Below, in pieces: positions 17,139 through 34,060 of a stretch of DNA of 64,000 bases. The DNA lies in IMG/VR virus record IMGVR_UViG_3300043446_003193, positions 145,444-209,443 of that record. One strand, given 5' to 3'. Every line of letters starts with the position of its first letter. Position 1 is the first letter of the stretch. Both the position numbers and the translations under genes were made by a program. Under the pieces are notes generated by a model that worked only from the letters and a program-made list of their open reading frames with translations, made no database searches and was not told where the DNA came from.

Positions 17139-20100
17139 TTATTCATAAAAAATACCAAGTATCTGATTTAATGGTGCGAATGTACCTGTAAGTTTATATG
17201 TTTTTCCATTATAAAAGAATACCAGTCCTTCATTTGCCACTATTCTTTCAATTCCACCCAATCTATTCAATCTACTCAATTCTTGTTTTAATTTTTGAAT
17301 TTGTGCAGGATTGCCAGAAGTTTTAACTTGATCGGCAACTGTTTTTAATCGTGATTTCATTGAACGAATTGCCTTATCAGGATGAACCGTCAATACACTA
17401 CCAACAAATTCTAAAACATCTGCACCTACTCCTAAAAATATTTCTTCAAATGGTTTGATATTATCTTTTTGTTGTTTTGCAACATTTACTTTATCATTAT
17501 TCATTGCCCAGTCTTGTAACTTAGGATTTGATATTGTATTTAATCTAAAAGATTTATCACCAAATGCCCATCTTCTAATTAAAGCTTCTTTTGTAAGTTT
17601 ATCAACTTTAACAGGTGCGTTTGATGTAATCCACCAATCCCACCAACTTTGATGATAATCTGCTACATTATCTGAATCTTTTAATCCAAATTCGGATTGT
17701 AATTTTGAAATCTTAGAAAGATATTTTGATTGTTTAGAACTTAAATCTTCTGATTTTGGAATTTCAGTTATTGGTGGTCCTTGAATTGTGTATTTAGATT
17801 GAACATCTGCATTTACTTGCTTAATCATACCTGCTAATACACTCTCTGCTCCATCCACCTTACCAACAGCGTTTCCTTTTTCATCATATTCTATACAATT
17901 GTGAAATACTAAAAGTGCTTGTCCGTAAGGAATAACATTTACCGAAGTTGGCCAAATTACTTCAATATTCATAAATTTGGTTCCTTCACCAAATACTTTT
18001 TCTCTTTGTTTTTGAGATAATGCAGATACTGCTGCTGAAAGGTCTTTCATTGCGTAATTATATGCATCTGTTAAACCACCTCTTCCGCCAAATTTTGATG
18101 CAACATCTTCAATGCCCATTGCACTTGCTCCACCATTTGATAAATGTCCTTTATTTCTAGCTGCAATTAATCTACCATTTTTCCAGCTGATTGCTAACGC
18201 CTGTCCATCGGTTTTTTCTCTTACTACACCTAAATCCCCATTAAGTGCTTTTGTAACGATATCTTTAAGGTGTCCAAATGTCAAATCCATATCATCAAAT
18301 GGATGACTCATATGACCATATGCCCCACCTTCCATTAATAGACCTTCTTTTAAAAATTCAGTTGGTTTTTCATCAAATCTAGGTAGGTTTCTTGCAGAAT
18401 ATTTTACAGTATATTGGGTTTCATCTTCATCACCCCATATTGCATCTGCTATTGGAAAATCCATCTGCGTATATCCACCACTATAATACCAATCATCTCC
18501 TTTATTTACACCATCGTCTGCGTCTAATTTTCTAGTATGTCCTTTTGGTAAATAAGCACCATCGGCTTGAGAATCTGCATCAGCTAATCCACTTATTTCA
18601 TTTATATACATTTCAATATCTTCGTATAATTTTGAAATTTGTTCGTCAAAGTTAGGTTTGATGTTTAATTCTTTTTCCATTTTAGTTATCTCATCATATC
18701 CCATATTTCTCAATGATCTTGCAACATCATTTGCTTTATATCCGTTTGGATTTCCGAATAAGTATGCATTTATTCTTTTTCTGAATGTTGAATTTTTATA
18801 TGCATCAATTAAATTTTTAAAATGAACATCATTGGAACCCATTTCATCTATTTTACGAAATGTAGTTGCCTGTCTTCCATTTATTGTTGGCATTCCATGA
18901 TCATCCTTTCCAATATCTTTAACTTGTACCTTTTTATTTTTAAACTTACCCATTAAAATAGTATCACCCGTATCAACATCTACATTAACATCTTCTTTGT
19001 TAATTTCAATTGCTGCCAGTTGCTTTTTAGCAGATGCTAACGAATCATGAGTTCCTAATCTATCTCCACCATTTTTTGGATATACAACATATTTGTCACC
19101 AACTTTTTTTATGGTTTCGTTTACATTTTCATTGTAGATTTGTTTGTTGATTCTACCATATTCTCTCATTAGAATTCCTGCAACTGCATGTGCTTGGTTT
19201 TCTATTGGAGAACCATCTGCACCATCTTTTTCTAAATTTCTAACTAACCCCAATTCATCTTGCTTTCTATGAACCATTTCATGTGCAAGAGTTCTTAGGA
19301 TATCTGCTGTTAATCTACCTTCGGTTGCAACATATATGGATTTATCTTCAGGATTATATCCACCTAAACTTGTTTTTACTTCTGCGAATTCTCTTCCACC
19401 AACTAATGTAACATTTGGTGTTTCTTTTAATTTTAATCTTTTAGTTGCAAATTCTACAAAATGTTGAATAGATTGTTGTTTTGTTTCTGATAAATTTTCA
19501 TTTAAAGAAAACTTACTAATCATTTTTTTATTATTCCAACTATCTGCTATTTTTTCCGCAATTTCAGGAGTAATATCCATATTTTCTATTCTTTCTGCAA
19601 TTGCGGCTGCAAATATATTTAGTGCACTTGCTTCATCAATATCTTCGGCAAAAATAGCAGCTTTTCCTACACCAGTTGCAACTACTTCTGTTACAGCATG
19701 TGGTATCAATTCCATAGCCGTATGTTTTACCAACCCAGCAGCACCATGTGCCAATCCGCCACCAACTGCTGCAAATAATGCTGTTGTAGCTATTTTAATA
19801 CCAACGGATTTTAAAGCTTTTTTCTGCTTATCATCTAATTTACCACCAGCCATTAAAGTTTTTACACTACTACCAGCTGTTTTAAATGTATCATATTCAT
19901 GCTTCAAACCATGCATAATTGCATGTCCAGCACCTTTTGCTTTGTCCATTATAGCCTGACCCCAACTTCTTCTCTCATCGTGTCCTTCTTTTTTATTTAA
20001 TAACTTAGAAAAAGTTTGTTTTTCTTCTTTACTCCAATTTTTTACTTTTTCTTGTATTCTTTTTACTTGACCTTCTTTTGTATTTCCTGATTTTTCTTTT

Positions 20101-21224
20101 TGTGCATTTTTTTCAGCATCAGATTTTAATTCTACACCAGATAATTTTTGTTCTGGAGGCGGACCTTGTTGGGTATCAGAATCGGTTCCTATTGGAGAAG
20201 TTTTTTCTTTATCTATTTTTCCTTGAGTGGTTTGTCCTTGTTTTGTTGGTTGTCCAGGCTCAGATGGTTTAGCTGCTTGAGTTGCTGCTTTTCCAGGTTC
20301 TTCTTTTTTCTTTGGTTGATTAGCAGGAGCATCGGCTGGCCCAGCTATTTTAGCAGCTTGAATATGTGCAGGATGCTCTTTAGGTAATCGTAATGCATCT
20401 CTTGCTTTAATTTTCTTTTGTTGTCCTTTTGAATTTGTATATGTTATATCAACGTCTAATGCAGGATTTTCAGCTTCTCCAAAATATTGATTTGTAAATT
20501 CTTCAAACATTTCATTGGTAATGTAGTTTTGAATTATTTCAGAAATAGGATCATATACATAATCATCGTCTGTTGTAGCTACTGCTCTAATTTCTTTATT
20601 CTTTTTTTCAATAGCCTCTACATCTTCTTTTGAAGGGTATCCTCTATATAATTCTTCGTTAAGTTTGGTTGTTATCATTTTGAATATTTCTCTATCAAAT
20701 TTTGGATATGCTTTTAAGAAAAACTTTTTAGCTTTTTCTTTATCATTACTTCCCAATCCTTTTCTAACTTGAGTTCCACTAATTGGATTTGGTTCTGGAG
20801 GGATAGGATATGTATAACCAATTTCATCATAACCATATCCAGATTTTCCGTTATATGGTTTGAAATATTTACCTTGTAACCTTGTTGCATCTTTTTCACC
20901 AACTGCTGCAATATAAGCAGTAGTTTTTCCATCAAACTTTCCAAGTATTTCTACCGGTCTATATGGGTTAGAAACTTTAACAAATTTTGAAGCAGGAACT
21001 CCAAACATTGTAGTTGCTATTTCTTTTTTTTCTTTAAAAGTAAATGGTGATTTATCTGAAGATGTATCATTAGAACTTGCTATATAGACATTTGCTTCTC
21101 CAAACTGAGAAACTAATCTTTGATACGCATCATAATGTCCTCTGTGAAATGGTTGAAAACGACCACCGTATATTACGATAGTTTTTTTAACCTCTGGTTT
21201 ATTCACTTCTTTTATTAAATTCAT
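17139..21224 (-). CDS. 1361-aa multidomain protein: HxGH nucleotidyltransferase + HExxH metallopeptidase-like + ATP-dependent ligase-like domain
   Basis: GGRFQPFHRGH and ISGTQVR; RTLAHEMVH..Q; EKTDG, NIEVI, LVFH, EGLVF, YKLTG ligase-superfamily motifs. Confidence 0.75.
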   Translation of the reverse strand: MNLIKEVNKPEVKKTIVIYGGRFQPFHRGHYDAYQRLVSQFGEANVYIASSNDTSSDKSPFTFKEKKEIATTMFGVPASKFVKVSNPYRPVEILGKFDGKTTAYIAAVGEKDATRLQGKYFKPYNGKSGYGYDEIGYTYPIPPEPNPISGTQVRKGLGSNDKEKAKKFFLKAYPKFDREIFKMITTKLNEELYRGYPSKEDVEAIEKKNKEIRAVATTDDDYVYDPISEIIQNYITNEMFEEFTNQYFGEAENPALDVDITYTNSKGQQKKIKARDALRLPKEHPAHIQAAKIAGPADAPANQPKKKEEPGKAATQAAKPSEPGQPTKQGQTTQGKIDKEKTSPIGTDSDTQQGPPPEQKLSGVELKSDAEKNAQKEKSGNTKEGQVKRIQEKVKNWSKEEKQTFSKLLNKKEGHDERRSWGQAIMDKAKGAGHAIMHGLKHEYDTFKTAGSSVKTLMAGGKLDDKQKKALKSVGIKIATTALFAAVGGGLAHGAAGLVKHTAMELIPHAVTEVVATGVGKAAIFAEDIDEASALNIFAAAIAERIENMDITPEIAEKIADSWNNKKMISKFSLNENLSETKQQSIQHFVEFATKRLKLKETPNVTLVGGREFAEVKTSLGGYNPEDKSIYVATEGRLTADILRTLAHEMVHRKQDELGLVRNLEKDGADGSPIENQAHAVAGILMREYGRINKQIYNENVNETIKKVGDKYVVYPKNGGDRLGTHDSLASAKKQLAAIEINKEDVNVDVDTGDTILMGKFKNKKVQVKDIGKDDHGMPTINGRQATTFRKIDEMGSNDVHFKNLIDAYKNSTFRKRINAYLFGNPNGYKANDVARSLRNMGYDEITKMEKELNIKPNFDEQISKLYEDIEMYINEISGLADADSQADGAYLPKGHTRKLDADDGVNKGDDWYYSGGYTQMDFPIADAIWGDEDETQYTVKYSARNLPRFDEKPTEFLKEGLLMEGGAYGHMSHPFDDMDLTFGHLKDIVTKALNGDLGVVREKTDGQALAISWKNGRLIAARNKGHLSNGGASAMGIEDVASKFGGRGGLTDAYNYAMKDLSAAVSALSQKQREKVFGEGTKFMNIEVIWPTSVNVIPYGQALLVFHNCIEYDEKGNAVGKVDGAESVLAGMIKQVNADVQSKYTIQGPPITEIPKSEDLSSKQSKYLSKISKLQSEFGLKDSDNVADYHQSWWDWWITSNAPVKVDKLTKEALIRRWAFGDKSFRLNTISNPKLQDWAMNNDKVNVAKQQKDNIKPFEEIFLGVGADVLEFVGSVLTVHPDKAIRSMKSRLKTVADQVKTSGNPAQIQKLKQELSRLNRLGGIERIVANEGLVFFYNGKTYKLTGTFAPLNQILGIFYE

Positions 21225-21277
21225 GTCTATAAATATCTTAAATGTTGTACTTTTAGCTTTTTAGTAACTTTTTTAAT

Positions 21278-21309
21278 CAAACATAGTGAAAATTTTTGAA
21301 ATTTCCAAT
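21278..21309 (-). promoter_or_regulatory. Bacteroidota sigma70-type promoter (ATTG-N20-TATGTTTG)
   Basis: Perfect TAnnTTTG -7 element; a late motif also lies at 21228-21236. Confidence 0.6.
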
Positions 21310-22697
21310 TAAAGTTTTACATTTATCATCCAAGCATTTTCTGCAAATTGTTCTTTTGATACTAATTCGTATTGAACTTGATTTATACCATCTTCCTTAT
21401 AATTTATTTTTCCTTCCTGCATTTCCTTAACAAATCTTCTTTCGTTTTTTGCAGTTGGTTCACCCTTTATCCATTCTCCATTTACAAATCCCTCACTAGG
21501 ATGTGGTAATGCGTAAAATCTTCCATTTCTTCTATATGGTGTATTATTACTACTTACTTTAAATGTTTCATTTGTTATCTCTACATTATGTATCAATAAA
21601 TCAGAAATTACATTATTTTTATCTTTTAAAAAATCAGATATATTTTCAGGTAAAACTACATCATTGTAAATTTTAATATCTGCAATCTTTCCTTTTAAAT
21701 AATTTGCTATAATTGGATTACATTCACTGCATGGATTTTTACCAATTAAAATATCATTATTATATTTTTTTAATTTACCTTCAAATTCATGCGGTTTATA
21801 TTCCAATGTTTCTGTTCTTGTATTTTTAATTAAATTACTATTACAATAAAAATATATTTTATTTTCTTTAGAGTCTACCGAAACTGTTATCCATGTCCAT
21901 TCTCCAAATCCTCTTTTTATCCATGCATAAATTTGATTATCGTTTTGAGAATATAAAGAAGCGGATATTGCTCTAGAATTATTAAATCCTATAAAATAAG
22001 ATTCTTTTTTATCTATACTTAAAATTGGATATTCTACATATCGTTTATCTTTTATACCTATTAACCATTCTTTATATTTTTCAGGCTGATCTTCAATTTT
22101 ACACAAAATAGATAATGTATGTGATTGGGATAATAATTCCGATATACCAGTATCTTTTGGAATCGTTATATAAGAATTCTCTCCATCAAAATTAAAACAA
22201 GGAATATCATTGTATTCAAAAAATAAATTATCTTCTGTTAATCCTTCAAAACGACATCTCCAAAATAGGTCATCATCTTCCATACCCCAATCCCAATATT
22301 CATTAGAGTAACCATTTGTTGCTTCTACCTGTTCTTTATTCATTAATACAACACCACCGAAGTATTGTTCATAGTTTAATCTATATTTGTATTTAGATAC
22401 GGCGGTTGCAATATGTGTTGGAAACTTGTCTGGATATGAATAATCACAACTATCGTTTTCCGGTAACATATCTACATCGTGAAAAGCAACATAATCACAT
22501 CCATCTTCAAATGCATGTTTGGCTGCAATATTTTTCATCGCACCTCTATTGAATAATTTATCATCCGTTTGGTGTACAATATAAAATTGATGTGGAATTC
22601 CTTTTTTGTTTAAAAATTTTGTAAGATGAGGAACTAACATTTTAAGATGATATTCCCTATCTCTATAAGGAACACATATTCCGAGTTTTTTTATCAT
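21309..22697 (-). CDS. GT7 (beta-1,4-galactosyltransferase-like) glycosyltransferase with inserted LamG/ConA domain
   Basis: VPYRDR, FNRG..KN, HDVD, YFGGV, NGYSN.YW.WG.EDDD; insert FDGENSYI...W..ITV...IGK...LKGKIADIKIYN. Confidence 0.85.
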   Translation of the reverse strand: MIKKLGICVPYRDREYHLKMLVPHLTKFLNKKGIPHQFYIVHQTDDKLFNRGAMKNIAAKHAFEDGCDYVAFHDVDMLPENDSCDYSYPDKFPTHIATAVSKYKYRLNYEQYFGGVVLMNKEQVEATNGYSNEYWDWGMEDDDLFWRCRFEGLTEDNLFFEYNDIPCFNFDGENSYITIPKDTGISELLSQSHTLSILCKIEDQPEKYKEWLIGIKDKRYVEYPILSIDKKESYFIGFNNSRAISASLYSQNDNQIYAWIKRGFGEWTWITVSVDSKENKIYFYCNSNLIKNTRTETLEYKPHEFEGKLKKYNNDILIGKNPCSECNPIIANYLKGKIADIKIYNDVVLPENISDFLKDKNNVISDLLIHNVEITNETFKVSSNNTPYRRNGRFYALPHPSEGFVNGEWIKGEPTAKNERRFVKEMQEGKINYKEDGINQVQYELVSKEQFAENAWMINVKL

Positions 22698-22699
22698 AA

Positions 22700-23164
22700 C
22701 TATTTTCCTTTAGGAGACACATAAATTGTATCTCTTATAAGTATTTGTTTTTCCGTATAAGGAGCATATACGGATGTATTATAACATTTAATATCTAAAA
22801 AATGACCAGCTTTTGTTGTTGGCATATTGACATATTCTATATTATTTATTTCTATTTCATTTAATTTATAATCTAATATTTTTATATTATTTCCTTCCTT
22901 TATTTGGGTATATAATTCATTTATTCTTATTTCCAATATTTCATCTGATTCATTTTTATATAAAACATATGAATCTGGATGAAAAATAATTCCATCAATT
23001 TTGTAATAGTTTGGTTCTTTCAAAACTTTAGTAAACTCTATTGTTGCGGTTTTATATTTTTCCTCAACAGGGCAATATCCTGTTAATGAGTTTACCTTTG
23101 GCTTTAAATCAATAATATTTTTAATTATTAATTCGTTATATTTTATATTCTCAAATAAATTCAT
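22700..23164 (-). CDS. Hypothetical protein, possibly a degenerate stand-alone Hint domain
   Basis: 154 aa; colinear similarity by eye to the adjacent Hint domain (see findings). Confidence 0.4.
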   Translation of the reverse strand: MNLFENIKYNELIIKNIIDLKPKVNSLTGYCPVEEKYKTATIEFTKVLKEPNYYKIDGIIFHPDSYVLYKNESDEILEIRINELYTQIKEGNNIKILDYKLNEIEINNIEYVNMPTTKAGHFLDIKCYNTSVYAPYTEKQILIRDTIYVSPKGK

Positions 23165-23166
23165 AA

Positions 23167-26100
23167 TTAAGGAGTTATTTTACCACCTGGCCCTAAAACG
23201 TTGTGTACTAATATATTATTTGCAAAGTAAGTATCATTTGTTTCAACATCTAATGAAATAAATTCATCTAATTCATCAACTCTTATTTTTTCTTCAATCA
23301 TTTCCCAGTTACCATCTAAATTATACATCATATCACCAACTATAACGTCTTCTGCTCTTAAAAATTTATATTCATTATCTCTTTTTATAAAAATAGGATG
23401 TTCAAAAGTTATTTTTAATTTATCATTTATTACATAATGATAATGCCAGACTCCACTTGTAACAGATTTTACGGCACTCATAGAATCTACATAATCAAAA
23501 GTATTTGTAGAAAATGTTTTCCATGCATCTTCTTCTTCAGAAAATCCATCAATAGAAATATTTTTTAATAAATCCCCTTCTATCAAATCTTCAACATTTT
23601 TTTCACTACCATCCCACATTAAAATTTTTGTACCTTTTGCTAAACACGTTCCGCCACCTGTACAATCACAACCTGCTCCTGTGTATTTATATATCAAACA
23701 AGAGGAATTTGCTGTTCCAGAACACCCACTTTCAGATACTGCATATATTTCATAATATATTGGGTTATCACATGCAATACTACTTATACTAAAAGCATAT
23801 GATGTACCAAATGAACGAGAACCTTGATTTAATATACTACCTTCCGGTCCATAATCAAATGTACATTTATACCAAACTACATAATAAGTCGCCGCATTTT
23901 GTGCGTTTGCAGTACCTGTTCTGGAAAATGCGTATGTTAAAGTACCACAAGTTGGAGTATCCAATGAAACAGTAGGTGCAGTTATATTTCCAGATGCAGC
24001 TACTGCATTATATGAAATTGCACTATTTGTTGCGGTTGTTGATAATAATGTATCTGATGAATTATATATTTTCGCTCTAAAATACATAGTAGTACCACTT
24101 GTTAGTGATATAAAAGCAGCATAATTAGTATTTGCTGTAATACTTGTAAATGTTTCTGCCGCCGTCCAAGTTGAATTATCCGTACTTTTTTCTATTACCA
24201 ATTTTGTAGCAGTATCAATTTGACCAACCGAATATGTAGCAGTTACTCCACCACATACTACTGATTTAGATACAAATGATAATGTATTTACTACACCTCT
24301 ATTTCTTAATACAATATAATAATCAGTTCCTTGAGAAGTATCTGTTGATGATTTTTGCCCATGTATACGATATGTAGTTGTTACTCCTAAAGTAGCACTA
24401 CTTACAACTCTTGCAGCTAAATAGTAATTACCATTTGTATATGGTAGACTGTTTCCAGAAGTATCACCTGTATTATATAATTGGAAGGTTTTTATATTTA
24501 GCGCACCTTCACCCTGTTGTGGAGATGTATTATCTGCTGTTTCCCAAAGTCCATTATATGTGTTTTGAAACATTCTAAACATACCATATGCGCCGGTTCC
24601 TGGTGCATTTCCGGAATCTACTGATACTGTCATTGTAGTATACGCACCTGGGAAATTACTCCAAGTGTATTTATTATCCATTGATAATACGGTATGTATG
24701 GATGCCAAAGCCTTTGTGTTCGGTTCTAAATTATCAAATGTAATTACAGAAGAATTTGTACTAAATGTACCGCCAGTTCTACCACTCCAGGTATCTAAAT
24801 TTATAATTCTAGTAGGAGTATATGTTGGTCCTTGATATGCGTATATACCATATAGTGTTGCAGGGGTATTTAATGTAAAAGTATAATCTAAATCTTCAAC
24901 TAATTGATTTGCAGTCCAACTAGAATATTTTATTGTACCCCAGTCATCGGTTGCTTTTACTCTCATTTTATATGTACTACCAAAACTCAAACCAGTAAAT
25001 GTAATACCCGATTGTGTTGTAAGAACAGTACCATTAGTATCTGCTATTTGGTATTCAACTGTTATATTATCAGCAGTTAAATCAATAGTTCCATCATTTG
25101 AATCATATGTTAATAATCCTGCATATATACTCATTTCAGTATATCCTTTTGTAAATGCTACACTAGGAGTTCCTGTTATTGATGCTAATCTTTTACCCTT
25201 TACTGTTATTGAAATATCTTTAGACCTTTCACTACCAGCATTAATATATAAAGTCCATGCATTAGTTGTACCGGAGTAAGTATATAAGTTACCCCACCAT
25301 GTATAAGTTACTGTTCCTCTTGATGAAGAACTTAAAGTAGTTTTTGATGTTGTTGCCAACTTTCTACAAAATGTAGTACTGGTATTTGTTCTTATCAAAT
25401 AAGTGCCATTATACGGGTTTGCACCATTAAAACTAAGTGGAGATGCTTGCATTCTATTATTATCTAACCAAACATACCAATATCCACCCTGTGAGTTTGT
25501 CTCAGTTGGACCGTTTGTTGTATATGATGCATCTAATGTAAAATTAACTCCTCTAATAGCATATCCGTCAACAAACCCACTTCCTCCTTTTACCACATCA
25601 ATTGTTCCAGGTTCTCTAGTAACAGTAACTGTTTTATTAGTTAAAGTATGATAATAATATAATCCTGAACTTATTGTATATGTTAAATAAACCGAACCAT
25701 ATCCATCACCAATTGTAGATGAATTACAAATTGCATCATATAAACTAAGTGCAGAAAAAGAAAAAGAAGCTACTGAATCTGGGTCTATTTGTGCATCAGT
25801 TAAACTTTGTCCTCCCGCACTTCCCCCATTTGGATAATATGCATCCAATCTTGCAGATATTTTAGTGAAATTGCCAGATGATCTGGTTACTGAAAAAACA
25901 ACAGACTGAACTTGAGAAAGTGTACCGGAATTTATGTTAGATGTTAAAGAATATCCGTATCCTTGATTTGGATACCCATATACTGTCACACTTGTTTCAT
26001 TAAAATCAGATTGTCTATATGTACCACCAGATGCTTTTACATGATAATACCAAGTTTGATCAGCAGATGGAGCAGTCCAACCATTATGTGCTGTTGTATA

Positions 26101-27963
26101 AGTACCACTATTCAAATCTGCATAAGTTCCTCCAGACCCTACTTTGTATTGAAAGTTATCATAAGTAAATGCAGTTGCTAATGATTTTGTTATACTAATA
26201 GAACCATTTGAATATTCTCTTCCAGTTACCCAACTTGCACCCAATCCAATTTGACTTTGATTTATTTTAAAACGAACACTAAAATTATCAGTTAATACAA
26301 ATCCATTTCCATCTGTAATTGTGGCCGTATGTGTTGATGTTCCATCATTTGCAGATGTCGCAGGATTATTAACAGTTATAGTAATTACTCCAGATGCCGT
26401 TTTTGCTCCTGATGCGGAAACCGTGCTATCGGTTGACGTAGCAGAAACACTTGTAACAGAAAATCCATTATCATTTGAACCATTAATAGTAACCGTTCCT
26501 GTAAAAGTTCTATTAGCTCCTGTTAAAACATAATCTTGATCATCAATTGTTAAAACTCCCTTTTGTGGTATTAATATATCTCCGGTTTCTGTATATCCGG
26601 ATACAAATGTAGAATTGCCATCGCTTCTTCTTGCTCTTACTCTTGCTTTTGCATATTGTGCAGTTGTAGTTTTACCTGCAATAGTTACCGAAGGTGTTAC
26701 ATTTGTACCGGCTGCAACCAAAGAAGTCCATGCTCCATAAGAACCACCACTATCTTTAACAGCATAATCTATATCATAATTTAAAGTAGTTCCACTTACA
26801 GCTGCAGTCAAAGCAGTGACCGTTACACCAAATGATTGTCCAAAAGCAGAATATGCTGCACTAATAGATGGTGAAACCATAGCAACAGTTACATTCGTAG
26901 TTGTATGATTTCTAACACTACTATTACTACTATTTGTAATATTTACTCTAAGAGATTGACTACCTAAAGTATTATAATAAATTGATAAATTTTGAGAAGT
27001 TGATGTAGAAATACTTGCTCCTGTTAATACCCAATTATAAGATATTGCAATAGAATCGGGATTATATAAAACTGTTGAAGTAACAGAATATGCAACAAAA
27101 GGTTCTACACTCGTAGAAGCACCAATTGATACCGCCATTGGTCTTCTAAATGTAGTTGCCGTAGTACTTGCCGTATCAAATGGGTTTGCCGAATCTTTGA
27201 CCACAATAGTATAATCATCATCGGCCGTATTACTTGAATTATTAAAAGTTGCAGTATTTACATCTGCAGAACCATAACCTGCTCCATTAAAATTATAATA
27301 ATACGGAGAAACACCACCTGCAACATTCACAGTAAAATCTACGGAACCGGTAGTATAATTATACGTTCCTGCGCCAGTAAATGATGGAGAAGTTGTAACT
27401 GATGTAATTGTTAAATCAACTGCATTTACAAAAACTGTTTTAGAATCATTTGCTTGTTTATTTGAAGAGTTTATTCTAAGTTCTAATCGTAATGTGTTTG
27501 TAGAATTTGGTACAATATATGTATTACTATTATCAACATAAAAGTCAGAAGCATTAGTTACATTTCCGGTAAGAGTTGCAGGAAATACATTTGTTCCAGT
27601 ATATACACCATTTACCCAGATTTTAATATATGCCGTTTCTCCGGACTGCATACCCGTCACAGTATATGTAAAATCTAATCTTTTACCTGATTGAGCATTT
27701 GTATTAGCAGGACTAGTTAAAGTATTTATTGTAATTGCAGGAACTTTACCTTCAAATTCTACAAACTCATATTGACTTCCAGTAGGCCTTGCTCCAGTAC
27801 TTGGGTTTAATACTCCGACAGTATTTGGTAAATCTCTGACAGTATTTGGGTCAACTGTACCGGTCAAAAATTGATTTGCAACATATGAACCACTTACTGT
27901 CGTAGTTGCAGTGTTAAGACCGGCAGAAGAACCTAAATCTCCAATTCGTATATTACTTGCCAT
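23167..27963 (-). CDS. Long Ser/Thr-rich fibre/adhesin (Ig/FN3-like beta repeats) with C-terminal Hint (BIL/hedgehog-like) domain
   Basis: Beta-rich T/S/G composition; GGGT/CLAKGTKI...TFEHP...SLDVE...YFANNILVHN at 23200-23646. Confidence 0.8.
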   Translation of the reverse strand: MASNIRIGDLGSSAGLNTATTTVSGSYVANQFLTGTVDPNTVRDLPNTVGVLNPSTGARPTGSQYEFVEFEGKVPAITINTLTSPANTNAQSGKRLDFTYTVTGMQSGETAYIKIWVNGVYTGTNVFPATLTGNVTNASDFYVDNSNTYIVPNSTNTLRLELRINSSNKQANDSKTVFVNAVDLTITSVTTSPSFTGAGTYNYTTGSVDFTVNVAGGVSPYYYNFNGAGYGSADVNTATFNNSSNTADDDYTIVVKDSANPFDTASTTATTFRRPMAVSIGASTSVEPFVAYSVTSTVLYNPDSIAISYNWVLTGASISTSTSQNLSIYYNTLGSQSLRVNITNSSNSSVRNHTTTNVTVAMVSPSISAAYSAFGQSFGVTVTALTAAVSGTTLNYDIDYAVKDSGGSYGAWTSLVAAGTNVTPSVTIAGKTTTAQYAKARVRARRSDGNSTFVSGYTETGDILIPQKGVLTIDDQDYVLTGANRTFTGTVTINGSNDNGFSVTSVSATSTDSTVSASGAKTASGVITITVNNPATSANDGTSTHTATITDGNGFVLTDNFSVRFKINQSQIGLGASWVTGREYSNGSISITKSLATAFTYDNFQYKVGSGGTYADLNSGTYTTAHNGWTAPSADQTWYYHVKASGGTYRQSDFNETSVTVYGYPNQGYGYSLTSNINSGTLSQVQSVVFSVTRSSGNFTKISARLDAYYPNGGSAGGQSLTDAQIDPDSVASFSFSALSLYDAICNSSTIGDGYGSVYLTYTISSGLYYYHTLTNKTVTVTREPGTIDVVKGGSGFVDGYAIRGVNFTLDASYTTNGPTETNSQGGYWYVWLDNNRMQASPLSFNGANPYNGTYLIRTNTSTTFCRKLATTSKTTLSSSSRGTVTYTWWGNLYTYSGTTNAWTLYINAGSERSKDISITVKGKRLASITGTPSVAFTKGYTEMSIYAGLLTYDSNDGTIDLTADNITVEYQIADTNGTVLTTQSGITFTGLSFGSTYKMRVKATDDWGTIKYSSWTANQLVEDLDYTFTLNTPATLYGIYAYQGPTYTPTRIINLDTWSGRTGGTFSTNSSVITFDNLEPNTKALASIHTVLSMDNKYTWSNFPGAYTTMTVSVDSGNAPGTGAYGMFRMFQNTYNGLWETADNTSPQQGEGALNIKTFQLYNTGDTSGNSLPYTNGNYYLAARVVSSATLGVTTTYRIHGQKSSTDTSQGTDYYIVLRNRGVVNTLSFVSKSVVCGGVTATYSVGQIDTATKLVIEKSTDNSTWTAAETFTSITANTNYAAFISLTSGTTMYFRAKIYNSSDTLLSTTATNSAISYNAVAASGNITAPTVSLDTPTCGTLTYAFSRTGTANAQNAATYYVVWYKCTFDYGPEGSILNQGSRSFGTSYAFSISSIACDNPIYYEIYAVSESGCSGTANSSCLIYKYTGAGCDCTGGGTCLAKGTKILMWDGSEKNVEDLIEGDLLKNISIDGFSEEEDAWKTFSTNTFDYVDSMSAVKSVTSGVWHYHYVINDKLKITFEHPIFIKRDNEYKFLRAEDVIVGDMMYNLDGNWEMIEEKIRVDELDEFISLDVETNDTYFANNILVHNVLGPGGKITP

Positions 27964-30900
27964 TAGATAAAACCTGTTTTAAAGTATTTACTTCTTTTTT
28001 TAAATTTTGTATTTGTTTAACCATAATTGGAATTAGTTCATTATATTTTATGGTTAAATACTCTCCCATTATTCTTCCATCTGTTAAATTTGGATATATT
28101 TTTTCAACATCTTGTGCAATAAATCCATAATGTTTTTTATTTTCACTATCAGAATTCCAACTATATGCAACCGGATGTAATCTATCCATATCTTCAATTT
28201 CAGTTTCATCTATATCAACTATATTTTTTTTCAATCTTATATCAGAACTAAGTGATGTTGAAAAACCGGCAATATCACCTTTTACATGCAATTCTCCATA
28301 GTGAGCAAAATATCCTGCAGATTTTATATTTGCATTAGCAGCTGTTGGTGTAGCAATATCTTCAACTTTAAGAAAATTACCAGTACTATCCTGTGAACTA
28401 TTAAATAATGCCTGTAATCCTCTTTCTGAAATTTCTACTTGTTTTGTTAATGAAGTAGCTGTTAAAGATAATCCTTTTGCATAATAATTTGTTGAAGATG
28501 GTGAATATGAATCTACTCCAATACTTTCTGCCCAAATTGCATATCCAGCTGGTATAGTACCAAATCCAAATAAAGTAAATGAATCATAATAATCAATATG
28601 CCATCTTGTTTTTCTATAATTCGCAACCAAACCATTTGATTTTGTAGTGGATATTTGTAATGGGTTTGTTGTTTTACCAAGAGTTATAAATTGAAAAGAA
28701 GTATCTGCAAATTCTTCTTGAGTACTTGTAGTAGATGGAGAAACTGTTCTAGAAATTGAACCAATTGATGTTCCACCATAAGATAATGTACTTGTTACAG
28801 TTGCAGTACCAGTAACCGAATCAAAAGAAGTATAAAAATCAATATATTGTCCATCCATTTGTGAAAGAGTAGTATATGATGTTCCTTTTTTAGTATTAAA
28901 ATATGATATAAAAGCAGTAACAGCTGCTTCAGCACTACCACCTATCCATCCTCTAGTGATAGAAGAATAATAATTTAAATTCGTTGGGTCTTGACTTAAA
29001 TTATATTTTATATGATATGCAATATTTAGAGCTGCTTGATCAACAGTTGAAAAAGTACCAGTAGAAGCTACATATGTATACTCCATTGTTGGAGCATTGT
29101 TCCATTCTAAATCAATTCTATATTTAACCGATGCGTTAATTGAATATGTTGATGTAGCAGATAAACTGGTATACATATTAGTACTTGTTGCCGACAAAGT
29201 AGCTACCGTAGAACCATTAACATTATACAAATACAAATTTTGTGGTGTTGAAGTTCCTATACTAAAATAAGTTTGAGCGGTAGTTGCCGTTATTGCACTA
29301 CCTGCTCCTGGAACTGTTGTTAACAATTCACCTGGATGAATAAGTACACGGTTTCCTGCATAGGTACTTTCCCCTGTAATTTGAATATAATTATCAGCCC
29401 CAGTTCCTCCAGCATTTAAAGTAATTTTATCTTTAGAAATGCTATTTTGACCAATAACCCACCCACCAATAGTACCATCAGTAGCAGTTATTTTTCCAGA
29501 TATGTTCGCGTTGGAAGCTACTAAAGCACCTGCAGTATCTACTCTAAATGGAGCAGAGTTAAATGCCGTATTACCCGCATGAAATCCTGCAATTGACATT
29601 ACCGCTTGTGAATTACCGGATGAATTACCTGCTATTACTCTTGATTGACCACCATCTAATATCACACCATTTGTTGCAGTACCACCAATTAATTTTCCTG
29701 CTTGAATTTCAAATCCACCAATTGATCCAGTTTGAGCAGTTAATGTTGTTGCAGATATTGCACCACCAATATCAACTATATTTGTTGCAGATGCATCGTA
29801 TTTAAAATAATTACTACCACTAACAAAACTTACTTTTGGTACAAATGAACTTCCACTAATTCCTAACCAAATACCATTAGTACCATATGATTGAACTCCT
29901 TGACCTATTGAAACAAATGGTTTGGTAGTTCCACCTGCTAATGTTATATTTGCAGCAGAACCAGATGCATTAGTACCAATATTTAAAGTATTTTTAACAT
30001 ACGATTCATCAAATATTGCAATCTTAGCTGCAACAAAGAAATCTTGTGTTCCCAAATATTCCCAATAAGAATTGCTTGCTCCATCGGTAGGTGCATTTCC
30101 AGTTGTTTGCTGTAATGTTGCGTAATATTTTGTAACACCTCCTGAACTTTGATAAACGGCATCTCTTCTTGAAGAACCCGCAACAGTTGTGTAATAATAA
30201 GTTGTGCCTGCTGCATATTCTCCTCTTAACACAATACCAGGACCCGTCGCTCCGGTATTTCCATCAGTACCATCCGATGAAACATTTACATTATGTGTTT
30301 TATAAAAAGTTGTAGAAGTTCCTTCCGAATCTACATATGATCCGGTAATGCTTACAATTAATCCACTTGTAGAAGATGGTGTAGAAGGTGTTATTGTTGT
30401 ATATCCATCACCATCTACACCGGCATTTGTACCATTTGTTACAGAAGATATTCTAAATGAAGGTATAACATATGGAGAAGTGGCATCATACGCATATGCA
30501 CTACCACCTTCATTTACATATAATTTAAATGAAGAAGGAGTACCATATGAACCTGCTGTACTTTTTGTAATAGTTTGTCCATCTTTTTCAATTGATACAA
30601 CTACCGCCGGTGGTGCCGCTAATGCTTTAGAAACGGTAGCTACAACATTTTTAGTACCAGATGTACCTTCACTATCGGTATAGTTTACAGGTATTGTTAC
30701 TTGAGCAGTTGAACCAGTTATTGAAGATGCCGTTGATGTTATTGTTATAACATTTGACGAAACTGTTCCTGCCAATCCATTTGTATATGTTGGTGTACCT
30801 ATTGAAGTAAATCTACTTGTACCAGATTCCAAAGCAGTTATCGTTAATGCGGTTGGAGTAGCAGAACCACTTGTTTTTGAATTTGCATTTATTGATTGTG

Positions 30901-33900
30901 CAGATGGAGATACTGCTACTAATACATTTGGTGTACCTGCTTTAGCTTTTGAATATGTTACTAATTTTACAAATGTACTATCACTTCCTCTACCATCTCT
31001 GTAAGTTACTTTTAAATTTATACTACCACTATCAGCGGATAACGCGGTTATAGAATAGTTGTTATTTGTAAGTACTGCTGTTACATTTGAAGATGATGAA
31101 ATACTTGCACTAAATTTATTGTTTCCAATTGTAGATGCGTATGAAATATCTTCACTTCCAACTTTTACTGATATAGAACCACTACTTGCTAAAAACCCAC
31201 CAAAAACAGTTCCACCAGAATATGCAGGAAATGTTGTATTTTCGTTTGATACTGTCACTGCAATTTGTGATTCAGCTATTACCGGAGTAATTGTAATTGT
31301 ATCACTATAAACTGCATTATTTAAATCATAAGCAGTAAATGTATATGTTGTTGCGCCAGATGAATATGAATAATCACTACCATTTATACTATATGATTGT
31401 ACACCGGTGGTATTATTGTTAGAACCAACGGTCAAAGCTGGTTTACTACTACCACTAGTTACAGTAATTTCATTTGTAGTACTTCCTAAATTATTTCTTT
31501 TTACATCAATTGTTATAGTTTGTCCAGATGGTGATAAACTCAAATCGGTCATTTTATAAAAAAACTGATTAGCGTTAGAAACTGCATTTAAGTTTTTACT
31601 CTTATCACCTTTTAATACACCTTCCAATTGTACCGAAGATGAATATCCTCCTTTATTAAAATAATAAGTTCCTTTATGTGTAAGTTGGGTAGGAGTAGCA
31701 TATGACCAAGATGCTACATTTGTACCTAGCATTGCAACATCGTGTTGATCATCTCCACTAAAAACACGATAAACAGACTCGGTAGATTTTCCTATATATT
31801 CGGTAGATATTAAAGCTAATTTTGGTAAATAAGAACCAGAAGTTATGTAAATACTACCAGAAACAATGTTATTTGTTAGCTTTATATCAATAAAATCATT
31901 AAGTTGTGCAGGAACATTATTATCGTCTGGATCATACACAAATTGATTTTTATTAGCAATTGCAATGAAATTTTGACCATCAATACCATCTGCACCAACA
32001 GCTCCTTGATCAACTCTATAAATGTTTACCAAATCTCTTACATCTTCGCAAGATGCCGTATATTGAACTCTACTAATTTTTGATGAAGATATTGATCCAG
32101 TAAAATTAGAAACCAAAAGAGTTGCGGATGTTTCCGTTACATTTGTTAATAAACCAGGATAAAAAGGTTCAGATGCATAAACCGATGGATTAATGTAATC
32201 ACCATTTGCATCAAATGCTGAAGAGTAGAATGTTACAGAACCGGTTAATCCTATTTTTGAAATATCAAAATTTATTGAAGATACTCCAATTGTTTCTCCT
32301 GAGCCAGAAAAACTAAATAGTGTATTATCTGGAGTTACTGTTAATGATTTTTGAACAATTGTATCTGTTCCACCAGTAAATGTAATTTCTTTTTCTAAAG
32401 TAACAGGTACATAATTGTTATTAATATCGTAAAATTCAAAACGAAAATCGTAAGTATCATTATTTACTTTAGTCGGAACATTTACATTTAGAGTAACTTC
32501 ATTAGGAGAAAAGTTTGTTTCTTGAGAAGCTCGTAAACTTATGTTTGATAAATACCATTCTCCTTGATGAATATTAAAAAATATTTGTCCCTGCCCATCA
32601 GTATCTGGTTTAAAATTTATTTGTTGTTTATCAAATCTTCTAAAAGATTCACTAACATTAAATTCACCTAAAAGTTTTCCATATCCAAGATCAGAGTCCT
32701 CAACTACGAATGCCGGTCCAACACCAAACACATTTAATTTTCCATAACCAAAAGAAGATGATTGCAATAAAAGACTGAAATCTAATTGATATTCAGTATT
32801 ACTTAGAAAATCAATATCATTGTGATTATAAAAAACTCTCTGTGGATGTTGTGTTGTATTTAAAGTATTATCGTCTTGTAGTTTTACTGAAGATGCTAAT
32901 ACTGAATCATTTTGTGTAGCAGTATAATATGTATTTTCTTCATGTTTTTTATATTTCCAAAAATCATCTATTATTTTTTGAGATGAAAATTGTCCTATTC
33001 TAACATTTACACTTCCACTATATGCATCAGTTTGAAATAGTTCATTTGATTCTAACTGAATATCTTCTAATAAACTATAATTTCCAATATCTGATTTTCT
33101 TTTACCAAATATTTTCAAACGATTTACATCACCACTAAATGTTTCCAAATTAGCTATTTTTATTTTAGCATAAGAAGAACTAATTGCAGAGTTTGTTAAA
33201 GTTACACTTTCGTTATATGGTAATGTAAATGATGCGGAAGAAAAATCAGTTACATATTGTACGGCGTTTGTGGCATTTGAAGATGTTTCATAATAAGGAA
33301 TTGTTGCTAATGCTTTTTTAGAATTAACAACATCTTTTATAATTGTAGAATATGATTGATTTAATCCAGTTATCGTAATTGTTTCACCTTCCATAGATGA
33401 TGAAAAATTACTTCCACTAATTTTTAATTCATAAATTGTATCACCTTTGAAAGTTCTAAAATTTGAACCAGATGTAGGTTGTACCGAAACACCATCAACA
33501 CTTCCACTAATAGTTACTCTATTTACAGTTCTATTGTATATTGGTAAAATTGTTTCAGTTATATCTACCGTCGGTCTACGATAGAAACGAATCTTTGTTG
33601 TATTTGCAATAATAGGATTTACATTCACTACTTTTTGCCATCTAACATTATATTGATTTTCCCAGTTTGAAGGGATTGGTGTTAGTAATCCATTAGCATC
33701 TTCATATTCACTTAATTCTCCTAATATAGTAATTGTACATGGACCAAATGCAGTATCTGGATAAACATATACTGCCACTACTTTTGAAGTTCCTTCATAA
33801 TATTCAGGAATACCTTCTCCTGGTTCGTGATAAATTACATTTCCTAATGCATCTTTAATTTCTATCTTTATAAGAGTATCGGCAACTAATTCAGGAGAAC

Positions 33901-34048
33901 CCTGAATTAAAAAAGAGTTTTTACCACCAGAAAAAGTTCCAGGTAGTTCGGTGATTCTAAAGTATCTACTATTTGGATCAGTATCTTCTAAAAATATATT
34001 ATATCTCTCTAAATTTTCTGGAAATAGAGTCTTTTTAAGAATGGCCAT
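27953..34048 (-). CDS. Long tail fibre with C-terminal peptidase S74 intramolecular chaperone
   Basis: SDIRLKKNI...PV.Y.W...GFIAQDV..IYP...YNELIP.MVKQIQ.L; GSIGGF/GTIGGW fibre repeats; short Gly-X-Y stretches. Confidence 0.88.
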   Translation of the reverse strand: MAILKKTLFPENLERYNIFLEDTDPNSRYFRITELPGTFSGGKNSFLIQGSPELVADTLIKIEIKDALGNVIYHEPGEGIPEYYEGTSKVVAVYVYPDTAFGPCTITILGELSEYEDANGLLTPIPSNWENQYNVRWQKVVNVNPIIANTTKIRFYRRPTVDITETILPIYNRTVNRVTISGSVDGVSVQPTSGSNFRTFKGDTIYELKISGSNFSSSMEGETITITGLNQSYSTIIKDVVNSKKALATIPYYETSSNATNAVQYVTDFSSASFTLPYNESVTLTNSAISSSYAKIKIANLETFSGDVNRLKIFGKRKSDIGNYSLLEDIQLESNELFQTDAYSGSVNVRIGQFSSQKIIDDFWKYKKHEENTYYTATQNDSVLASSVKLQDDNTLNTTQHPQRVFYNHNDIDFLSNTEYQLDFSLLLQSSSFGYGKLNVFGVGPAFVVEDSDLGYGKLLGEFNVSESFRRFDKQQINFKPDTDGQGQIFFNIHQGEWYLSNISLRASQETNFSPNEVTLNVNVPTKVNNDTYDFRFEFYDINNNYVPVTLEKEITFTGGTDTIVQKSLTVTPDNTLFSFSGSGETIGVSSINFDISKIGLTGSVTFYSSAFDANGDYINPSVYASEPFYPGLLTNVTETSATLLVSNFTGSISSSKISRVQYTASCEDVRDLVNIYRVDQGAVGADGIDGQNFIAIANKNQFVYDPDDNNVPAQLNDFIDIKLTNNIVSGSIYITSGSYLPKLALISTEYIGKSTESVYRVFSGDDQHDVAMLGTNVASWSYATPTQLTHKGTYYFNKGGYSSSVQLEGVLKGDKSKNLNAVSNANQFFYKMTDLSLSPSGQTITIDVKRNNLGSTTNEITVTSGSSKPALTVGSNNNTTGVQSYSINGSDYSYSSGATTYTFTAYDLNNAVYSDTITITPVIAESQIAVTVSNENTTFPAYSGGTVFGGFLASSGSISVKVGSEDISYASTIGNNKFSASISSSSNVTAVLTNNNYSITALSADSGSINLKVTYRDGRGSDSTFVKLVTYSKAKAGTPNVLVAVSPSAQSINANSKTSGSATPTALTITALESGTSRFTSIGTPTYTNGLAGTVSSNVITITSTASSITGSTAQVTIPVNYTDSEGTSGTKNVVATVSKALAAPPAVVVSIEKDGQTITKSTAGSYGTPSSFKLYVNEGGSAYAYDATSPYVIPSFRISSVTNGTNAGVDGDGYTTITPSTPSSTSGLIVSITGSYVDSEGTSTTFYKTHNVNVSSDGTDGNTGATGPGIVLRGEYAAGTTYYYTTVAGSSRRDAVYQSSGGVTKYYATLQQTTGNAPTDGASNSYWEYLGTQDFFVAAKIAIFDESYVKNTLNIGTNASGSAANITLAGGTTKPFVSIGQGVQSYGTNGIWLGISGSSFVPKVSFVSGSNYFKYDASATNIVDIGGAISATTLTAQTGSIGGFEIQAGKLIGGTATNGVILDGGQSRVIAGNSSGNSQAVMSIAGFHAGNTAFNSAPFRVDTAGALVASNANISGKITATDGTIGGWVIGQNSISKDKITLNAGGTGADNYIQITGESTYAGNRVLIHPGELLTTVPGAGSAITATTAQTYFSIGTSTPQNLYLYNVNGSTVATLSATSTNMYTSLSATSTYSINASVKYRIDLEWNNAPTMEYTYVASTGTFSTVDQAALNIAYHIKYNLSQDPTNLNYYSSITRGWIGGSAEAAVTAFISYFNTKKGTSYTTLSQMDGQYIDFYTSFDSVTGTATVTSTLSYGGTSIGSISRTVSPSTTSTQEEFADTSFQFITLGKTTNPLQISTTKSNGLVANYRKTRWHIDYYDSFTLFGFGTIPAGYAIWAESIGVDSYSPSSTNYYAKGLSLTATSLTKQVEISERGLQALFNSSQDSTGNFLKVEDIATPTAANANIKSAGYFAHYGELHVKGDIAGFSTSLSSDIRLKKNIVDIDETEIEDMDRLHPVAYSWNSDSENKKHYGFIAQDVEKIYPNLTDGRIMGEYLTIKYNELIPIMVKQIQNLKKEVNTLKQVLSNGK

Positions 34049-34060
34049 TAATCTTTTTAC

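What the first reader, a model, noticed from the sequence alone, without database searches (positions are those of the whole stretch)
23167..23720. Tail fibre ending in a non-splicing Hint domain
Seen: GCDCTGGGT/CLAKG...TFEH...VHN/VLGPGGKITP. Cys1, block-B TxxH and terminal HN are intact, but the +1 residue is Val and only 10 aa follow. Established: canonical splicing needs C/S/T at +1; BIL and hedgehog Hints instead cleave or transfer the N-terminal protein to an external nucleophile. Inference: the fibre C-terminus is activated as a thioester for self-release or covalent ligation to another virion protein, glycan or host surface. The neighbouring fibre uses a different autoprocessing module (S74).
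Basis: partly seen in the sequence, partly recalled or inferred. Interest (0 to 1): 0.7.

Follow-up and report, generated by a model that had tools for sequence, protein, structure and literature searches.

The report
Self-removing Hint domain ending a phage fibre
A 1,598-residue fibre-like protein of an uncultured T4-like phage ends in a real, catalytically intact intein-like (Hint) domain that cannot splice in the usual way; it belongs to a large, unstudied family of such end-modules that nearly always carry one lysine in a short tail, and it most likely cuts itself off the finished fibre.

Summary
ORF 23167..27963(-) ends in a 149-residue Hint domain: Cys1440, Thr1519-x-x-His1522, His1587-Asn1588. 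Val is at +1 and 10 residues follow. The AF2 model (pLDDT 90.7) matches bacterial intein-like (BIL) domains best: BIL2 of Tetrahymena BUBL, then the Clostridium thermocellum BIL.

It is one of a large family (448 clusters at E<=1e-10):
- 133 of the 150 best hits carry the Hint at the extreme C-terminus. Tails are 1-29 residues, never 0, and +1 is variable.
- The catalytic residues are about 89-98% conserved.
- New here: 111 of 121 tails hold exactly one Lys, against about 42 in controls.

Seven of 35 full-length orthologues lack the Hint and stop within a few residues of the Cys1 junction, in syntenic loci. They form two separate clades, so the module is dispensable and was probably lost twice.

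Best reading: a type-A-BIL-like module that removes itself. The thioester is probably resolved by the tail lysine, followed by Asn cyclisation. Self-release is well supported. The lysine step is inferred. Ligation to another virion protein, glycan or host has no support here.

The body is a chain of beta-sandwich domains. "Tail fibre" is plausible from context but not shown.

The parts
23167..27963 (-). Whole gene: 1598-aa fibre-like protein with a terminal Hint domain. Its start overlaps the stop of the upstream S74 fibre gene by 11 nt.
   Evidence: 35 full-length orthologues at 36-90% identity
27745..27963 (-). Residues 1-73: the most conserved stretch among orthologues (MASNIK..LG.SAGLNTATTT...). 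Low confidence in the monomer model. Presumed attachment or oligomerisation segment.
23671..27744 (-). Residues 74-1431: all-beta chain of ten or more beta-sandwich (Ig/fn3-like) domains.
   Evidence: AF2 on 1-1200. Foldseek top matches are GhpA grappling hook, mastigoneme and titin-like chains. Weak fn3 hit at 966-1015.
23647..23670 (-). Residues 1432-1439, CDCTGGGT: CxC motif plus a Gly-rich linker just before the scissile bond. Hint-less orthologues end here.
23200..23646 (-). Hint domain, residues 1440-1588 (149 aa, mini-intein size, no endonuclease insert).
23644..23646 (-). Cys1440 (Cys1), the nucleophile for the N-S acyl shift. Cys in 184 of 188 aligned family copies.
23398..23409 (-). 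Block B, Thr1519-Phe-Glu-His1522. Thr in 167 and His in 180 family copies.
23200..23205 (-). His1587-Asn1588, the block G end. His in 190 and Asn in 182 family copies.
23170..23199 (-). Ten-residue tail VLGPGGKITP. Val1589 is at +1 and is not a nucleophile. The single Lys1595 is at 23179-23181.
27953..34048 (-). Upstream neighbour: 2031-aa tail fibre with a Peptidase_S74 intramolecular-chaperone domain (about 28085-28246).
22700..23164 (-). Downstream 154-aa ORF. It is syntenic in all related loci, with or without the Hint. Function unknown. It is not a Hint.
21309..22697 (-). GT7 (beta-1,4-galactosyltransferase-like) plus LamG/ConA-like protein, syntenic with the fibre pair.

Best explanation
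The last 159 residues are a type-A bacterial-intein-like (BIL) autoprocessing module. It is fused to the C-terminus of a long virion appendage protein made of Ig-like beads, in a T4-like phage whose host is probably a member of Bacteroidota.

Proposed mechanism:
1. After folding, Cys1440 attacks the Thr1439-Cys1440 peptide bond, helped by Thr1519 and His1522. This gives a thioester.
2. There is no Cys, Ser or Thr at +1, so the thioester is resolved by an amine carried on the flexible tail. The most likely candidate is the epsilon-amine of the single Lys1595.
3. Asn1588 cyclises, helped by His1587, and frees the 149-residue Hint domain.

The net result is a mature fibre of 1439 residues that no longer carries the Hint. 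Its new C-terminus is either amide-linked to the 10-residue tail or, if water wins, simply free. The product resembles the natural orthologues that have no Hint at all.

What is shown: the domain, its fold, its catalytic residues, the family-wide terminal architecture, the single-Lys tail and the Hint-less orthologues.
What is inferred: that cleavage happens, the order of the steps and the role of the lysine.
For: Fold and closest relatives. The top matches are BIL2 of Tetrahymena BUBL1 and the C. thermocellum BIL.

Catalytic residues across 188-199 aligned domain copies at about 25-45% identity: C1 184, Thr 167, His 180, penultimate His 190, Asn 182.

Terminal architecture: 133 of the 150 best cluster representatives have it. 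Tails are 1-29 aa with a median of 8 and are never 0. The +1 residue is A, V, I, K, F, L and others; only 9 are Ser or Thr and none is Cys.

Tail lysine:
- At least one Lys in 116 of 121 tails, against 81.9+-4.9 in length-matched C-termini of this phage's own ORFs.
- Exactly one Lys in 111 of 121, against 42.2+-5.2 in the same control and 40.3+-5.1 after shuffling the pooled tail residues.
- The Lys position varies from +1 to +26, as expected of a tethered nucleophile rather than a fixed structural contact.
- All 29 Hint-bearing members of the orthologue group (the window protein and 28 others) keep one Lys although their tails differ in length and sequence.

Hint-less orthologues: 7 of 35 end within a few residues of the Cys1 junction. 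Their loci are syntenic and the next gene starts at or within about 10 nt of the stop. They form two separate well-supported clades.

Precedents from the literature: type A BILs form the thioester, cleave by Asn cyclisation and can ligate through a free amine (PMC4031507). BIL2 makes a Lys isopeptide (PMC8616854).
Against: No experiment on any member of this subfamily was found.

C-termini in this AT-rich phage are Lys-rich anyway: 67% of ORFs have a Lys in their last 8 residues. The 'at least one Lys' signal is therefore smaller than it first looks. The 'exactly one' signal is the stronger one.

More distant cultured-phage members have 1-3 Lys in the tail: Alexandra gp112 ends TDIVAKAEKK, and the two NCTB proteins end APVDQKH and AVMVAKK.

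Type A BILs are reported to give mainly cleavage products, so hydrolysis may dominate.

The tail is modelled at pLDDT below 50, so its reach to the active site could not be checked.

Cluster representatives are not phylogenetically independent.
Confidence: 0.55

Rival explanations
1. Plain double autoproteolysis. The Hint forms the thioester and water hydrolyses it, while Asn cyclisation separately clips off the tail. The lysine is not a nucleophile. It might tune local pKa or solubility, or reflect composition. The Hint would act as a disposable folding or assembly aid, like the S74 module next door.
For: Type A BILs give mostly cleavage products (PMC4031507). Hint-less orthologues end with a free C-terminus at the same place. 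The neighbouring fibre uses a self-cleaving chaperone.
Against: It does not explain why the tail is never absent or why Asn is kept in 182 copies. It also does not explain why exactly one Lys, at a variable position, is kept in 111 of 121 tails, including long acidic ones.
Confidence: 0.3
2. Trans-ligation. The thioester is passed to an external nucleophile, such as a Lys on another virion protein, a glycan or a host surface molecule, fixing the fibre covalently.
For: The closest solved relative, BIL2, can hand its N-extein to other proteins (PMC8616854). A glycosyltransferase-lectin gene lies two genes downstream.
Against: Hint-less orthologues sit in the same syntenic loci, so no obligatory covalent partner is implied. 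A conserved cis tail with its own amine, plus a conserved Asn, points to resolution in cis. The complex prediction with the neighbouring ORF gave no answer.
Confidence: 0.08
3. A harmless selfish or neutral passenger. The Hint plus Lys-tail is a self-splicing cassette that spreads or duplicates at the 3' ends of fibre and adhesin genes and persists because it removes itself, with no benefit to the phage. This concerns why it exists, not how it works, and is compatible with the chemistry of the best explanation.
For: It was lost at least twice without loss of the gene. Head-to-tail arrays of up to 8 or more copies occur in other proteins. It is fused to many unrelated N-terminal modules: BACON, collagen, fn3, Ig, tail-collar and gp38.
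Against: There is no homing endonuclease. It is inherited vertically across orthologues at 36-90% identity, and the Hint is as conserved as the body or more so. In both losses the last body domain is also strongly diverged.
Confidence: 0.2
4. An inactive Hint that is retained in the virion as a structural or binding domain.
For: Pfam scores are below the gathering cut-offs. Some Hint relatives have lost activity, although I tested none here.
Against: All five catalytic positions are intact here and about 89-98% conserved in the family. Hint-less orthologues exist.
Confidence: 0.05

Closest known systems
Type A bacterial intein-like (BIL) domains (Amitai et al. 2003; Dassa et al. 2004; solved example C. 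thermocellum BIL, PDB 2LWY)
   Same: Mini-Hint size, Cys1, block B TxxH, C-terminal His-Asn and no nucleophile at +1. They sit in variable, non-conserved surface or fibrous proteins. Second-best match by sequence profile and by fold. The literature definition was read.
   Different: Here the domain lies at the very end of the protein, followed only by a 1-29 residue tail with one Lys. I found no description of this sub-architecture or of a Lys signature. All curated Pfam and NCBIfam models score below their cut-offs.
BIL2 of the Tetrahymena thermophila BUBL1 polyubiquitin-like locus (PDB 6Y75, 6TMM)
   Same: Best match by both profile (E 5e-19) and fold. It uses a Lys epsilon-amine of the downstream sequence to resolve the thioester, forming an isopeptide.
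   Different: It is eukaryotic and sits between two ubiquitin-like domains. Its acceptor Lys lies in a folded domain, and it is reported to be Zn-activated. Here the downstream sequence is a short disordered tail, and no chemistry has been shown.
Hedgehog C-terminal autoprocessing domain (Hog)
   Same: A C-terminal Hint that forms a thioester and releases the N-terminal protein. The fold matches (1AT0, 6TYY).
   Different: Hog has a sterol-recognition region after the Hint, uses cholesterol and has no terminal Asn. Here only 10 residues follow and His-Asn is conserved.
Peptidase S74 intramolecular chaperone of phage fibres and tailspikes
   Same: A C-terminal module of a phage fibre that is expected to remove itself after assembly. 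One is present in the adjacent gene.
   Different: The fold and chemistry are unrelated: S74 is a Ser-Lys dyad protease active in the trimer. The similarity is in function only.
Terminal-Hint tail proteins of jumbo phages (Erwinia phage Alexandra gp112, annotated 'virion structural protein'; phage NCTB BN7874_132 and BN7874_136)
   Same: The same terminal Hint with a short Lys-containing tail, on tail-module proteins next to tail-fibre genes.
   Different: Only 26-36% identical in the Hint, with unrelated bodies. They are annotated but, as far as I could find, not studied.

Membership tests
Hint (hedgehog/intein) superfamily | Hint beta-fold | tested here: met
   AF2 pLDDT 90.7. Foldseek probability 1.0 to BIL, intein and hedgehog structures.
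Hint (hedgehog/intein) superfamily | N-terminal nucleophile (block A Cys/Ser) and block B TxxH | tested here: met
   Cys1440 and Thr1519..His1522.
Canonical class 1 intein | Cys, Ser or Thr at +1 of the C-extein | tested here: not met
   Val1589. Across the family, +1 is Ser or Thr in only 9 of 133 and never Cys.
Canonical class 1 intein | Inserted inside a conserved host protein whose sequence continues after the intein | tested here: not met
   Only 10 residues follow. Hint-less orthologues end at the junction.
Type A BIL domain | C-terminal His-Asn as in intein block G | tested here: met
   His1587-Asn1588. His in 190 and Asn in 182 family copies. Definition from PMC4031507.
Type A BIL domain | No +1 nucleophile | tested here: met
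Type A BIL domain | Located in variable regions of non-conserved proteins | tested here: met
   N-terminal partners include BACON, collagen, fn3, Ig, Flg_new, tail-collar and gp38. Presence and absence both occur among orthologues.
Type A BIL domain | Autocatalytic cleavage or splicing activity | not testable with these tools
   Needs expression and mass spectrometry.
Type B BIL domain | No similarity to intein block G (no terminal His-Asn) | tested here: not met
   His-Asn is present and conserved.
Hedgehog Hog domain | Sterol-recognition region after the Hint, and no terminal Asn | tested here: not met
   A 10-residue tail and a conserved Asn.
Pretoxin HINT (PT-HINT, PF07591) | Followed by a C-terminal toxin domain, and a score above the Pfam cut-off | tested here: not met
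   20.9 bits against a cut-off of 27.7. No domain follows.
BUBL BIL2-type lysine-directed splicing | A Lys amine downstream of the Hint resolves the thioester to an isopeptide | tested here: inconclusive
   A single Lys in the tail is a strong family signature and BIL2 is the nearest solved relative. The chemistry cannot be tested here.
Phage tail fibre | Virion tail component attached to the baseplate | tested here: inconclusive
   The gene lies in the structural module next to an S74 fibre, with gp6-like baseplate, portal, capsid and terminase genes in the window. The fold is a beta-sandwich chain. There is no PHROG or Pfam fibre match and no proteomics.

The most novel reading that the evidence does not exclude
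The terminal Hint plus single-lysine tail is a natural lysine-directed protein-splicing module that is widespread in phages. It would write an isopeptide-branched, amide-capped C-terminus onto fibre and adhesin proteins. In some contexts it might pass the activated C-terminus to a lysine of another protein, as BIL2 of ciliates does. Head-to-tail arrays of the same module (HN-K-GG-C junctions) would then excise to leave chains linked through lysine side chains.
Probability: 0.3. Interest if true: 0.8.

Novelty: new variant of a known kind. Interest (0 to 1): 0.6.

Why it matters
[quoted passage not shown] Phage fibre maturation by self-cleaving modules is known mainly through the S74 chaperone.

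This work defines a large family: 1,862 clusters at E<=1e-3. The members are Hint modules at the ends of phage and phage-like fibrous proteins, and no curated model captures them at threshold. Two handles make the question testable:
- Natural orthologues with and without the module, cut at exactly the predicted scissile bond.
- A single conserved lysine in an otherwise free-evolving tail.

If the lysine is the resolving nucleophile, this would be lysine-directed splicing in viruses of bacteria. The only precedent I found is a ciliate protein. It would also be a compact natural tool for C-terminal protein ligation.

Culturable relatives exist for virion mass spectrometry, for example Erwinia phage Alexandra gp112.

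Tried and rejected
Searches that led nowhere:
- Megablast of 21000-35000 against cultured phages: no match.
- tblastn of the body (residues 1-1414) against cultured phages: no match.
- PHROGs: no family for the Hint protein, the 154-aa ORF or the GT7 protein.
- NCBIfam: only sub-threshold intein hits.
- The search for related loci with the whole protein in IMG/VR: nothing besides the own record.
- The search for homologous proteins with the Hint alone: only 6 hits, because of the length and word limits.

Ideas tested and rejected:
- I asked whether the downstream 154-aa ORF is a degenerate stand-alone Hint, as in phage NCTB. It is not (hhalign probability 0.5%), and the protein atlas gave no lead.
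- The N-terminus of the body shares nothing with the neighbouring fibre.
- The complex prediction of residues 1300-1598 with the 154-aa ORF gave no answer and is not evidence either way.

Literature: nine searches found no study of terminal Hint domains in phage tail proteins. The Dassa 2004 and Chiarini 2021 papers are not held.

A correction to my own first test: I first measured tail-Lys enrichment against the proteins' own bodies (27 expected). That control was too lenient, because C-termini in this phage are Lys-rich. I replaced it with length-matched C-termini and a shuffle of the tail residues.
Full report
**1. What is in the sequence**

ORF 23167..27963 on the minus strand encodes 1598 residues. 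Its last 159 residues read T1439 | C1440-LAKGTKILMWDG ... T1519-FEH1522 ... ILVH1587-N1588 | V1589-LGPGGK1595-ITP-stop. I checked the key codons by hand on the printed DNA:
- Cys1 at 23644-23646
- His-Asn at 23200-23205
- Lys1595 at 23179-23181
- stop at 23167-23169

Its interval runs from the stop codon to 74 nt upstream of Cys1.

**2. Is it a Hint domain?**

Pfam finds Intein_splicing (E 8.9e-5), PT-HINT and Hom_end_hint, all below their gathering scores. NCBIfam is likewise sub-threshold.

A single-sequence search of PDB sequences finds the KlbA intein, the C. thermocellum BIL and a Tetrahymena Hint. A profile built from 104 family members gives E 5e-19 to BIL2 of the Tetrahymena BUBL1 locus (6Y75, 6TMM) and 2.7e-13 to the C. 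thermocellum BIL (2LWY), followed by many inteins.

AF2 on that alignment gives pLDDT 90.7 and pTM 0.85, with only the N-terminal linker and the tail disordered. Foldseek ranks BIL2 first, the C. thermocellum BIL next, then mini-inteins and the hedgehog autoprocessing domain, all at probability 1.0.

The domain has 149 residues, which is mini-intein size with no endonuclease insert.

**3. It belongs to a large family of end-modules**

An exhaustive HMMER scan of 1.84 billion cluster representatives found 1,862 proteins at E<=1e-3, 448 at <=1e-10 and 10 at <=1e-30. I re-aligned the 150 best.

Catalytic positions in 188-199 aligned domain copies:
- Cys1: 184
- block B Thr: 167
- block B His: 180
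- penultimate His: 190
- terminal Asn: 182. A further 11 have His-His followed by a Cys-rich tail, which marks a distinct sub-branch.

Architecture:
- 133 of the 150 proteins carry the Hint at the extreme C-terminus.
- The tail after the Asn is 1-29 residues with a median of 8, and is never zero.
- The +1 residue is A 26, V 18, I 16, K 13, F 11, L 10 and so on. Only 9 are Ser or Thr and none is Cys.
- The residue before Cys1 is most often Gly, usually at the end of a Gly-rich linker.

These features match the published definition of type A BIL domains: C-terminal His-Asn, no +1 nucleophile, location in variable non-conserved proteins, and the ability to cleave and sometimes to ligate through a free amine (PMC4031507; PMC7765530).

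The N-terminal partners of the family are fibrous or adhesive modules: BACON, collagen, fn3, Ig, Listeria-Bacteroides repeat, phage tail-collar and gp38 adhesin.

Among cultured phages the same end-module occurs in tail-module proteins of the jumbo Erwinia, Dickeya and Yersinia phage group and of phage NCTB. An example is Alexandra gp112, annotated 'virion structural protein', which ends ...VLVHN-TDIVAKAEKK. These proteins are also the top BFVD structural matches. I found no paper that studies them.

**4. A new signature: one lysine in the tail**

The tails are otherwise unconserved, but 116 of 121 contain a Lys.
- Against random windows of the same proteins, 27 would be expected. That control is too lenient, because in this AT-rich phage 67% of ORFs have a Lys in their last eight residues.
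- Against length-matched C-termini of the phage's own ORFs the expectation is 81.9+-4.9, and the maximum of 200,000 simulations was 103.
- For tails of 8 residues or fewer, 74 of 75 have a Lys against 44 expected.

The sharper result is that 111 of 121 tails hold exactly one Lys.
- Control C-termini give 42.2+-5.2 (maximum 62 of 20,000).
- Shuffling the pooled tail residues gives 40.3+-5.1 (maximum 60).
- The rule holds in every length class, including 24 of 28 long acidic tails.

Further details:
- Arg is not enriched. The K/R ratio is 6.6 in tails and 1.4 in bodies.
- The Lys position varies from +1 to +26, with a mode at +4 to +6. Usually 0-3 residues follow it.
- All 29 Hint-bearing members of the orthologue group (the window protein and 28 others) keep one Lys even though the tails differ freely. 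The window has VLGPGGKITP, while the 90%-identical P0151 has IIEK.

A single, movable, never-duplicated amine on a flexible tether next to the active site is what a resolving nucleophile would look like. The nearest solved relative, BIL2, uses exactly such a downstream lysine to form an isopeptide (PMC8616854). This is an inference and no chemistry was tested. More distant cultured-phage members have 1-3 Lys.

**5. A natural deletion experiment**

A search with the body (residues 1-1430) found 34 proteins, which with one more from the first scan make 35 full-length orthologues at 36-90% identity, all from metagenomes.
- 28 of them carry the Hint.
- Seven (P0155, P0156, P0163, P0167, P0168, P0173, P0176) do not. 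They end ...C-x-FGC-NN-C-[IVA]* or ...VTC*. In the alignment this is within a few residues of the window's C1432-D-C-T-G-G-G-T | C1440 junction.
- Their loci are fully syntenic: S74 fibre, then this gene, then a 150-161-aa ORF, then the GT7 glycosyltransferase. The next ORF starts at or within about 10 nt of the stop codon, overlapping it in one locus, so no Hint is hidden downstream.
- On a tree of the bodies, the Hint-less proteins form two separate well-supported clades nested among Hint-bearing ones. At least two changes are needed, most simply two losses.

The module is therefore ancestral in this gene, vertically inherited and dispensable, and its boundary is the predicted scissile bond. 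This is the strongest indirect evidence that the mature protein lacks the Hint.

One caveat: in the Hint-less clades the last body domain is also strongly diverged. Loss may therefore need compensation.

**6. The rest of the protein and its setting**

The record is a 209-kb IMG/VR virus, and the window is its last 64 kb. The window holds gp23-like capsid, gp20-like portal, gp17-like terminase and gp6-like baseplate genes.

The capsid protein is about 54% identical to those of Flavobacterium phage immuto and Microcystis phage Mel-JY01. The phage is thus a distant T4-like myovirus. A Bacteroidota host is my guess only.

AF2 on residues 1-1200 with 33 orthologues gives the following:
- a low-confidence N-terminal 73 residues, which is also the most conserved stretch
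- ten or more beta-sandwich domains after it

Foldseek matches long Ig-like chains such as the Aureispira grappling-hook protein and mastigonemes.

'Tail fibre' is therefore plausible from position and shape, but there is no fibre-family match and no proteomics.

**7. Mechanism and rivals**

Most likely mechanism:
1. An N-S acyl shift at Cys1440.
2. Resolution of the thioester by the tail amine. Lys1595 is preferred. The alpha-amine of Val1589 after Asn cyclisation is the published type-A alternative.
3. Asn1588 cyclisation, which releases the Hint.

My confidence that the Hint removes itself is about 0.75-0.8. My confidence that the lysine is the nucleophile is about 0.4. For the combined statement I give 0.55.

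Rivals:
- Plain hydrolysis with the Hint as a disposable folding aid: 0.3.
- A harmless selfish cassette: 0.2. This concerns why it exists and is compatible with the chemistry above.
- Trans-ligation to another molecule: 0.08.
- An inactive, retained domain: 0.05.

**8. Novelty**

The domain class, type A BIL, is known. Phage proteins 'containing an intein domain' are already annotated. As far as my searches reach, the following are new:
- recognition of a large family at the ends of phage fibre and adhesin proteins
- the single-lysine tail
- the paired Hint-bearing and Hint-less orthologues

I rate it a new variant of a known kind, with interest 0.6.

Noticed in passing
not in the window; proteins P0128, P0104, P0136, P0081, P0080, P0147; locus L013:5335-9192 for P0128: The same Hint subfamily occurs in head-to-tail arrays of 3 to at least 8 copies, with junctions such as VHN-K-GG-C. 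The residue after His-Asn is Lys in 36 of 61 internal copies. P0128 lies in a compact, phage-like gene row next to LamG and glycosyltransferase genes. What such arrays produce is unexplained.
   Followed up: partly
window 34325-37471 (-): Mre11/SbcD-like nuclease (residues about 5-334) and Rad50/SbcC-like ATPase (about 279-1047) are fused in one 1048-aa ORF. In T4 these are two genes, gp47 and gp46. The fusion is conserved in related contigs.
   Followed up: partly
window 21309-22697 (-): A glycosyltransferase of family 7 (the animal beta-1,4-galactosyltransferase type, both Pfam halves above cut-off) is fused to a LamG/ConA-like lectin domain. It lies two genes downstream of the Hint protein and is syntenic in all related loci. 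It may glycosylate the Ser/Thr-rich fibres.
   Followed up: no
window 17139-21224 (-): A 1361-aa ORF has an N-terminal cytidylyltransferase-like domain, a long Lys/Glu/Pro-rich low-complexity middle and a large unassigned C-terminal part. Related contigs hold 1424-1733-aa versions.
   Followed up: no
window 23647-23760 (-), residues about 1400-1439: The last body segment is Cys-rich (..ESGC..SSC..GCDC..), with a CxC motif 6-8 residues before Cys1. Hint-less orthologues end in C-x-FGC-NN-C. Whether these cysteines form disulfides, or a redox trap with Cys1, is open.
   Followed up: no
family sub-branch, e.g. P0054, P0060, P0064, P0070, P0092: A sub-branch replaces the terminal His-Asn with His-His and has a conserved tail, FCETCSGLSGRI, with a CxxC motif. 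It presumably uses a different C-terminal chemistry.
   Followed up: no
window 42056-47089 (-): A 1677-aa ORF between the baseplate genes and the fibre genes has no Pfam or PHROG match at all.
   Followed up: no
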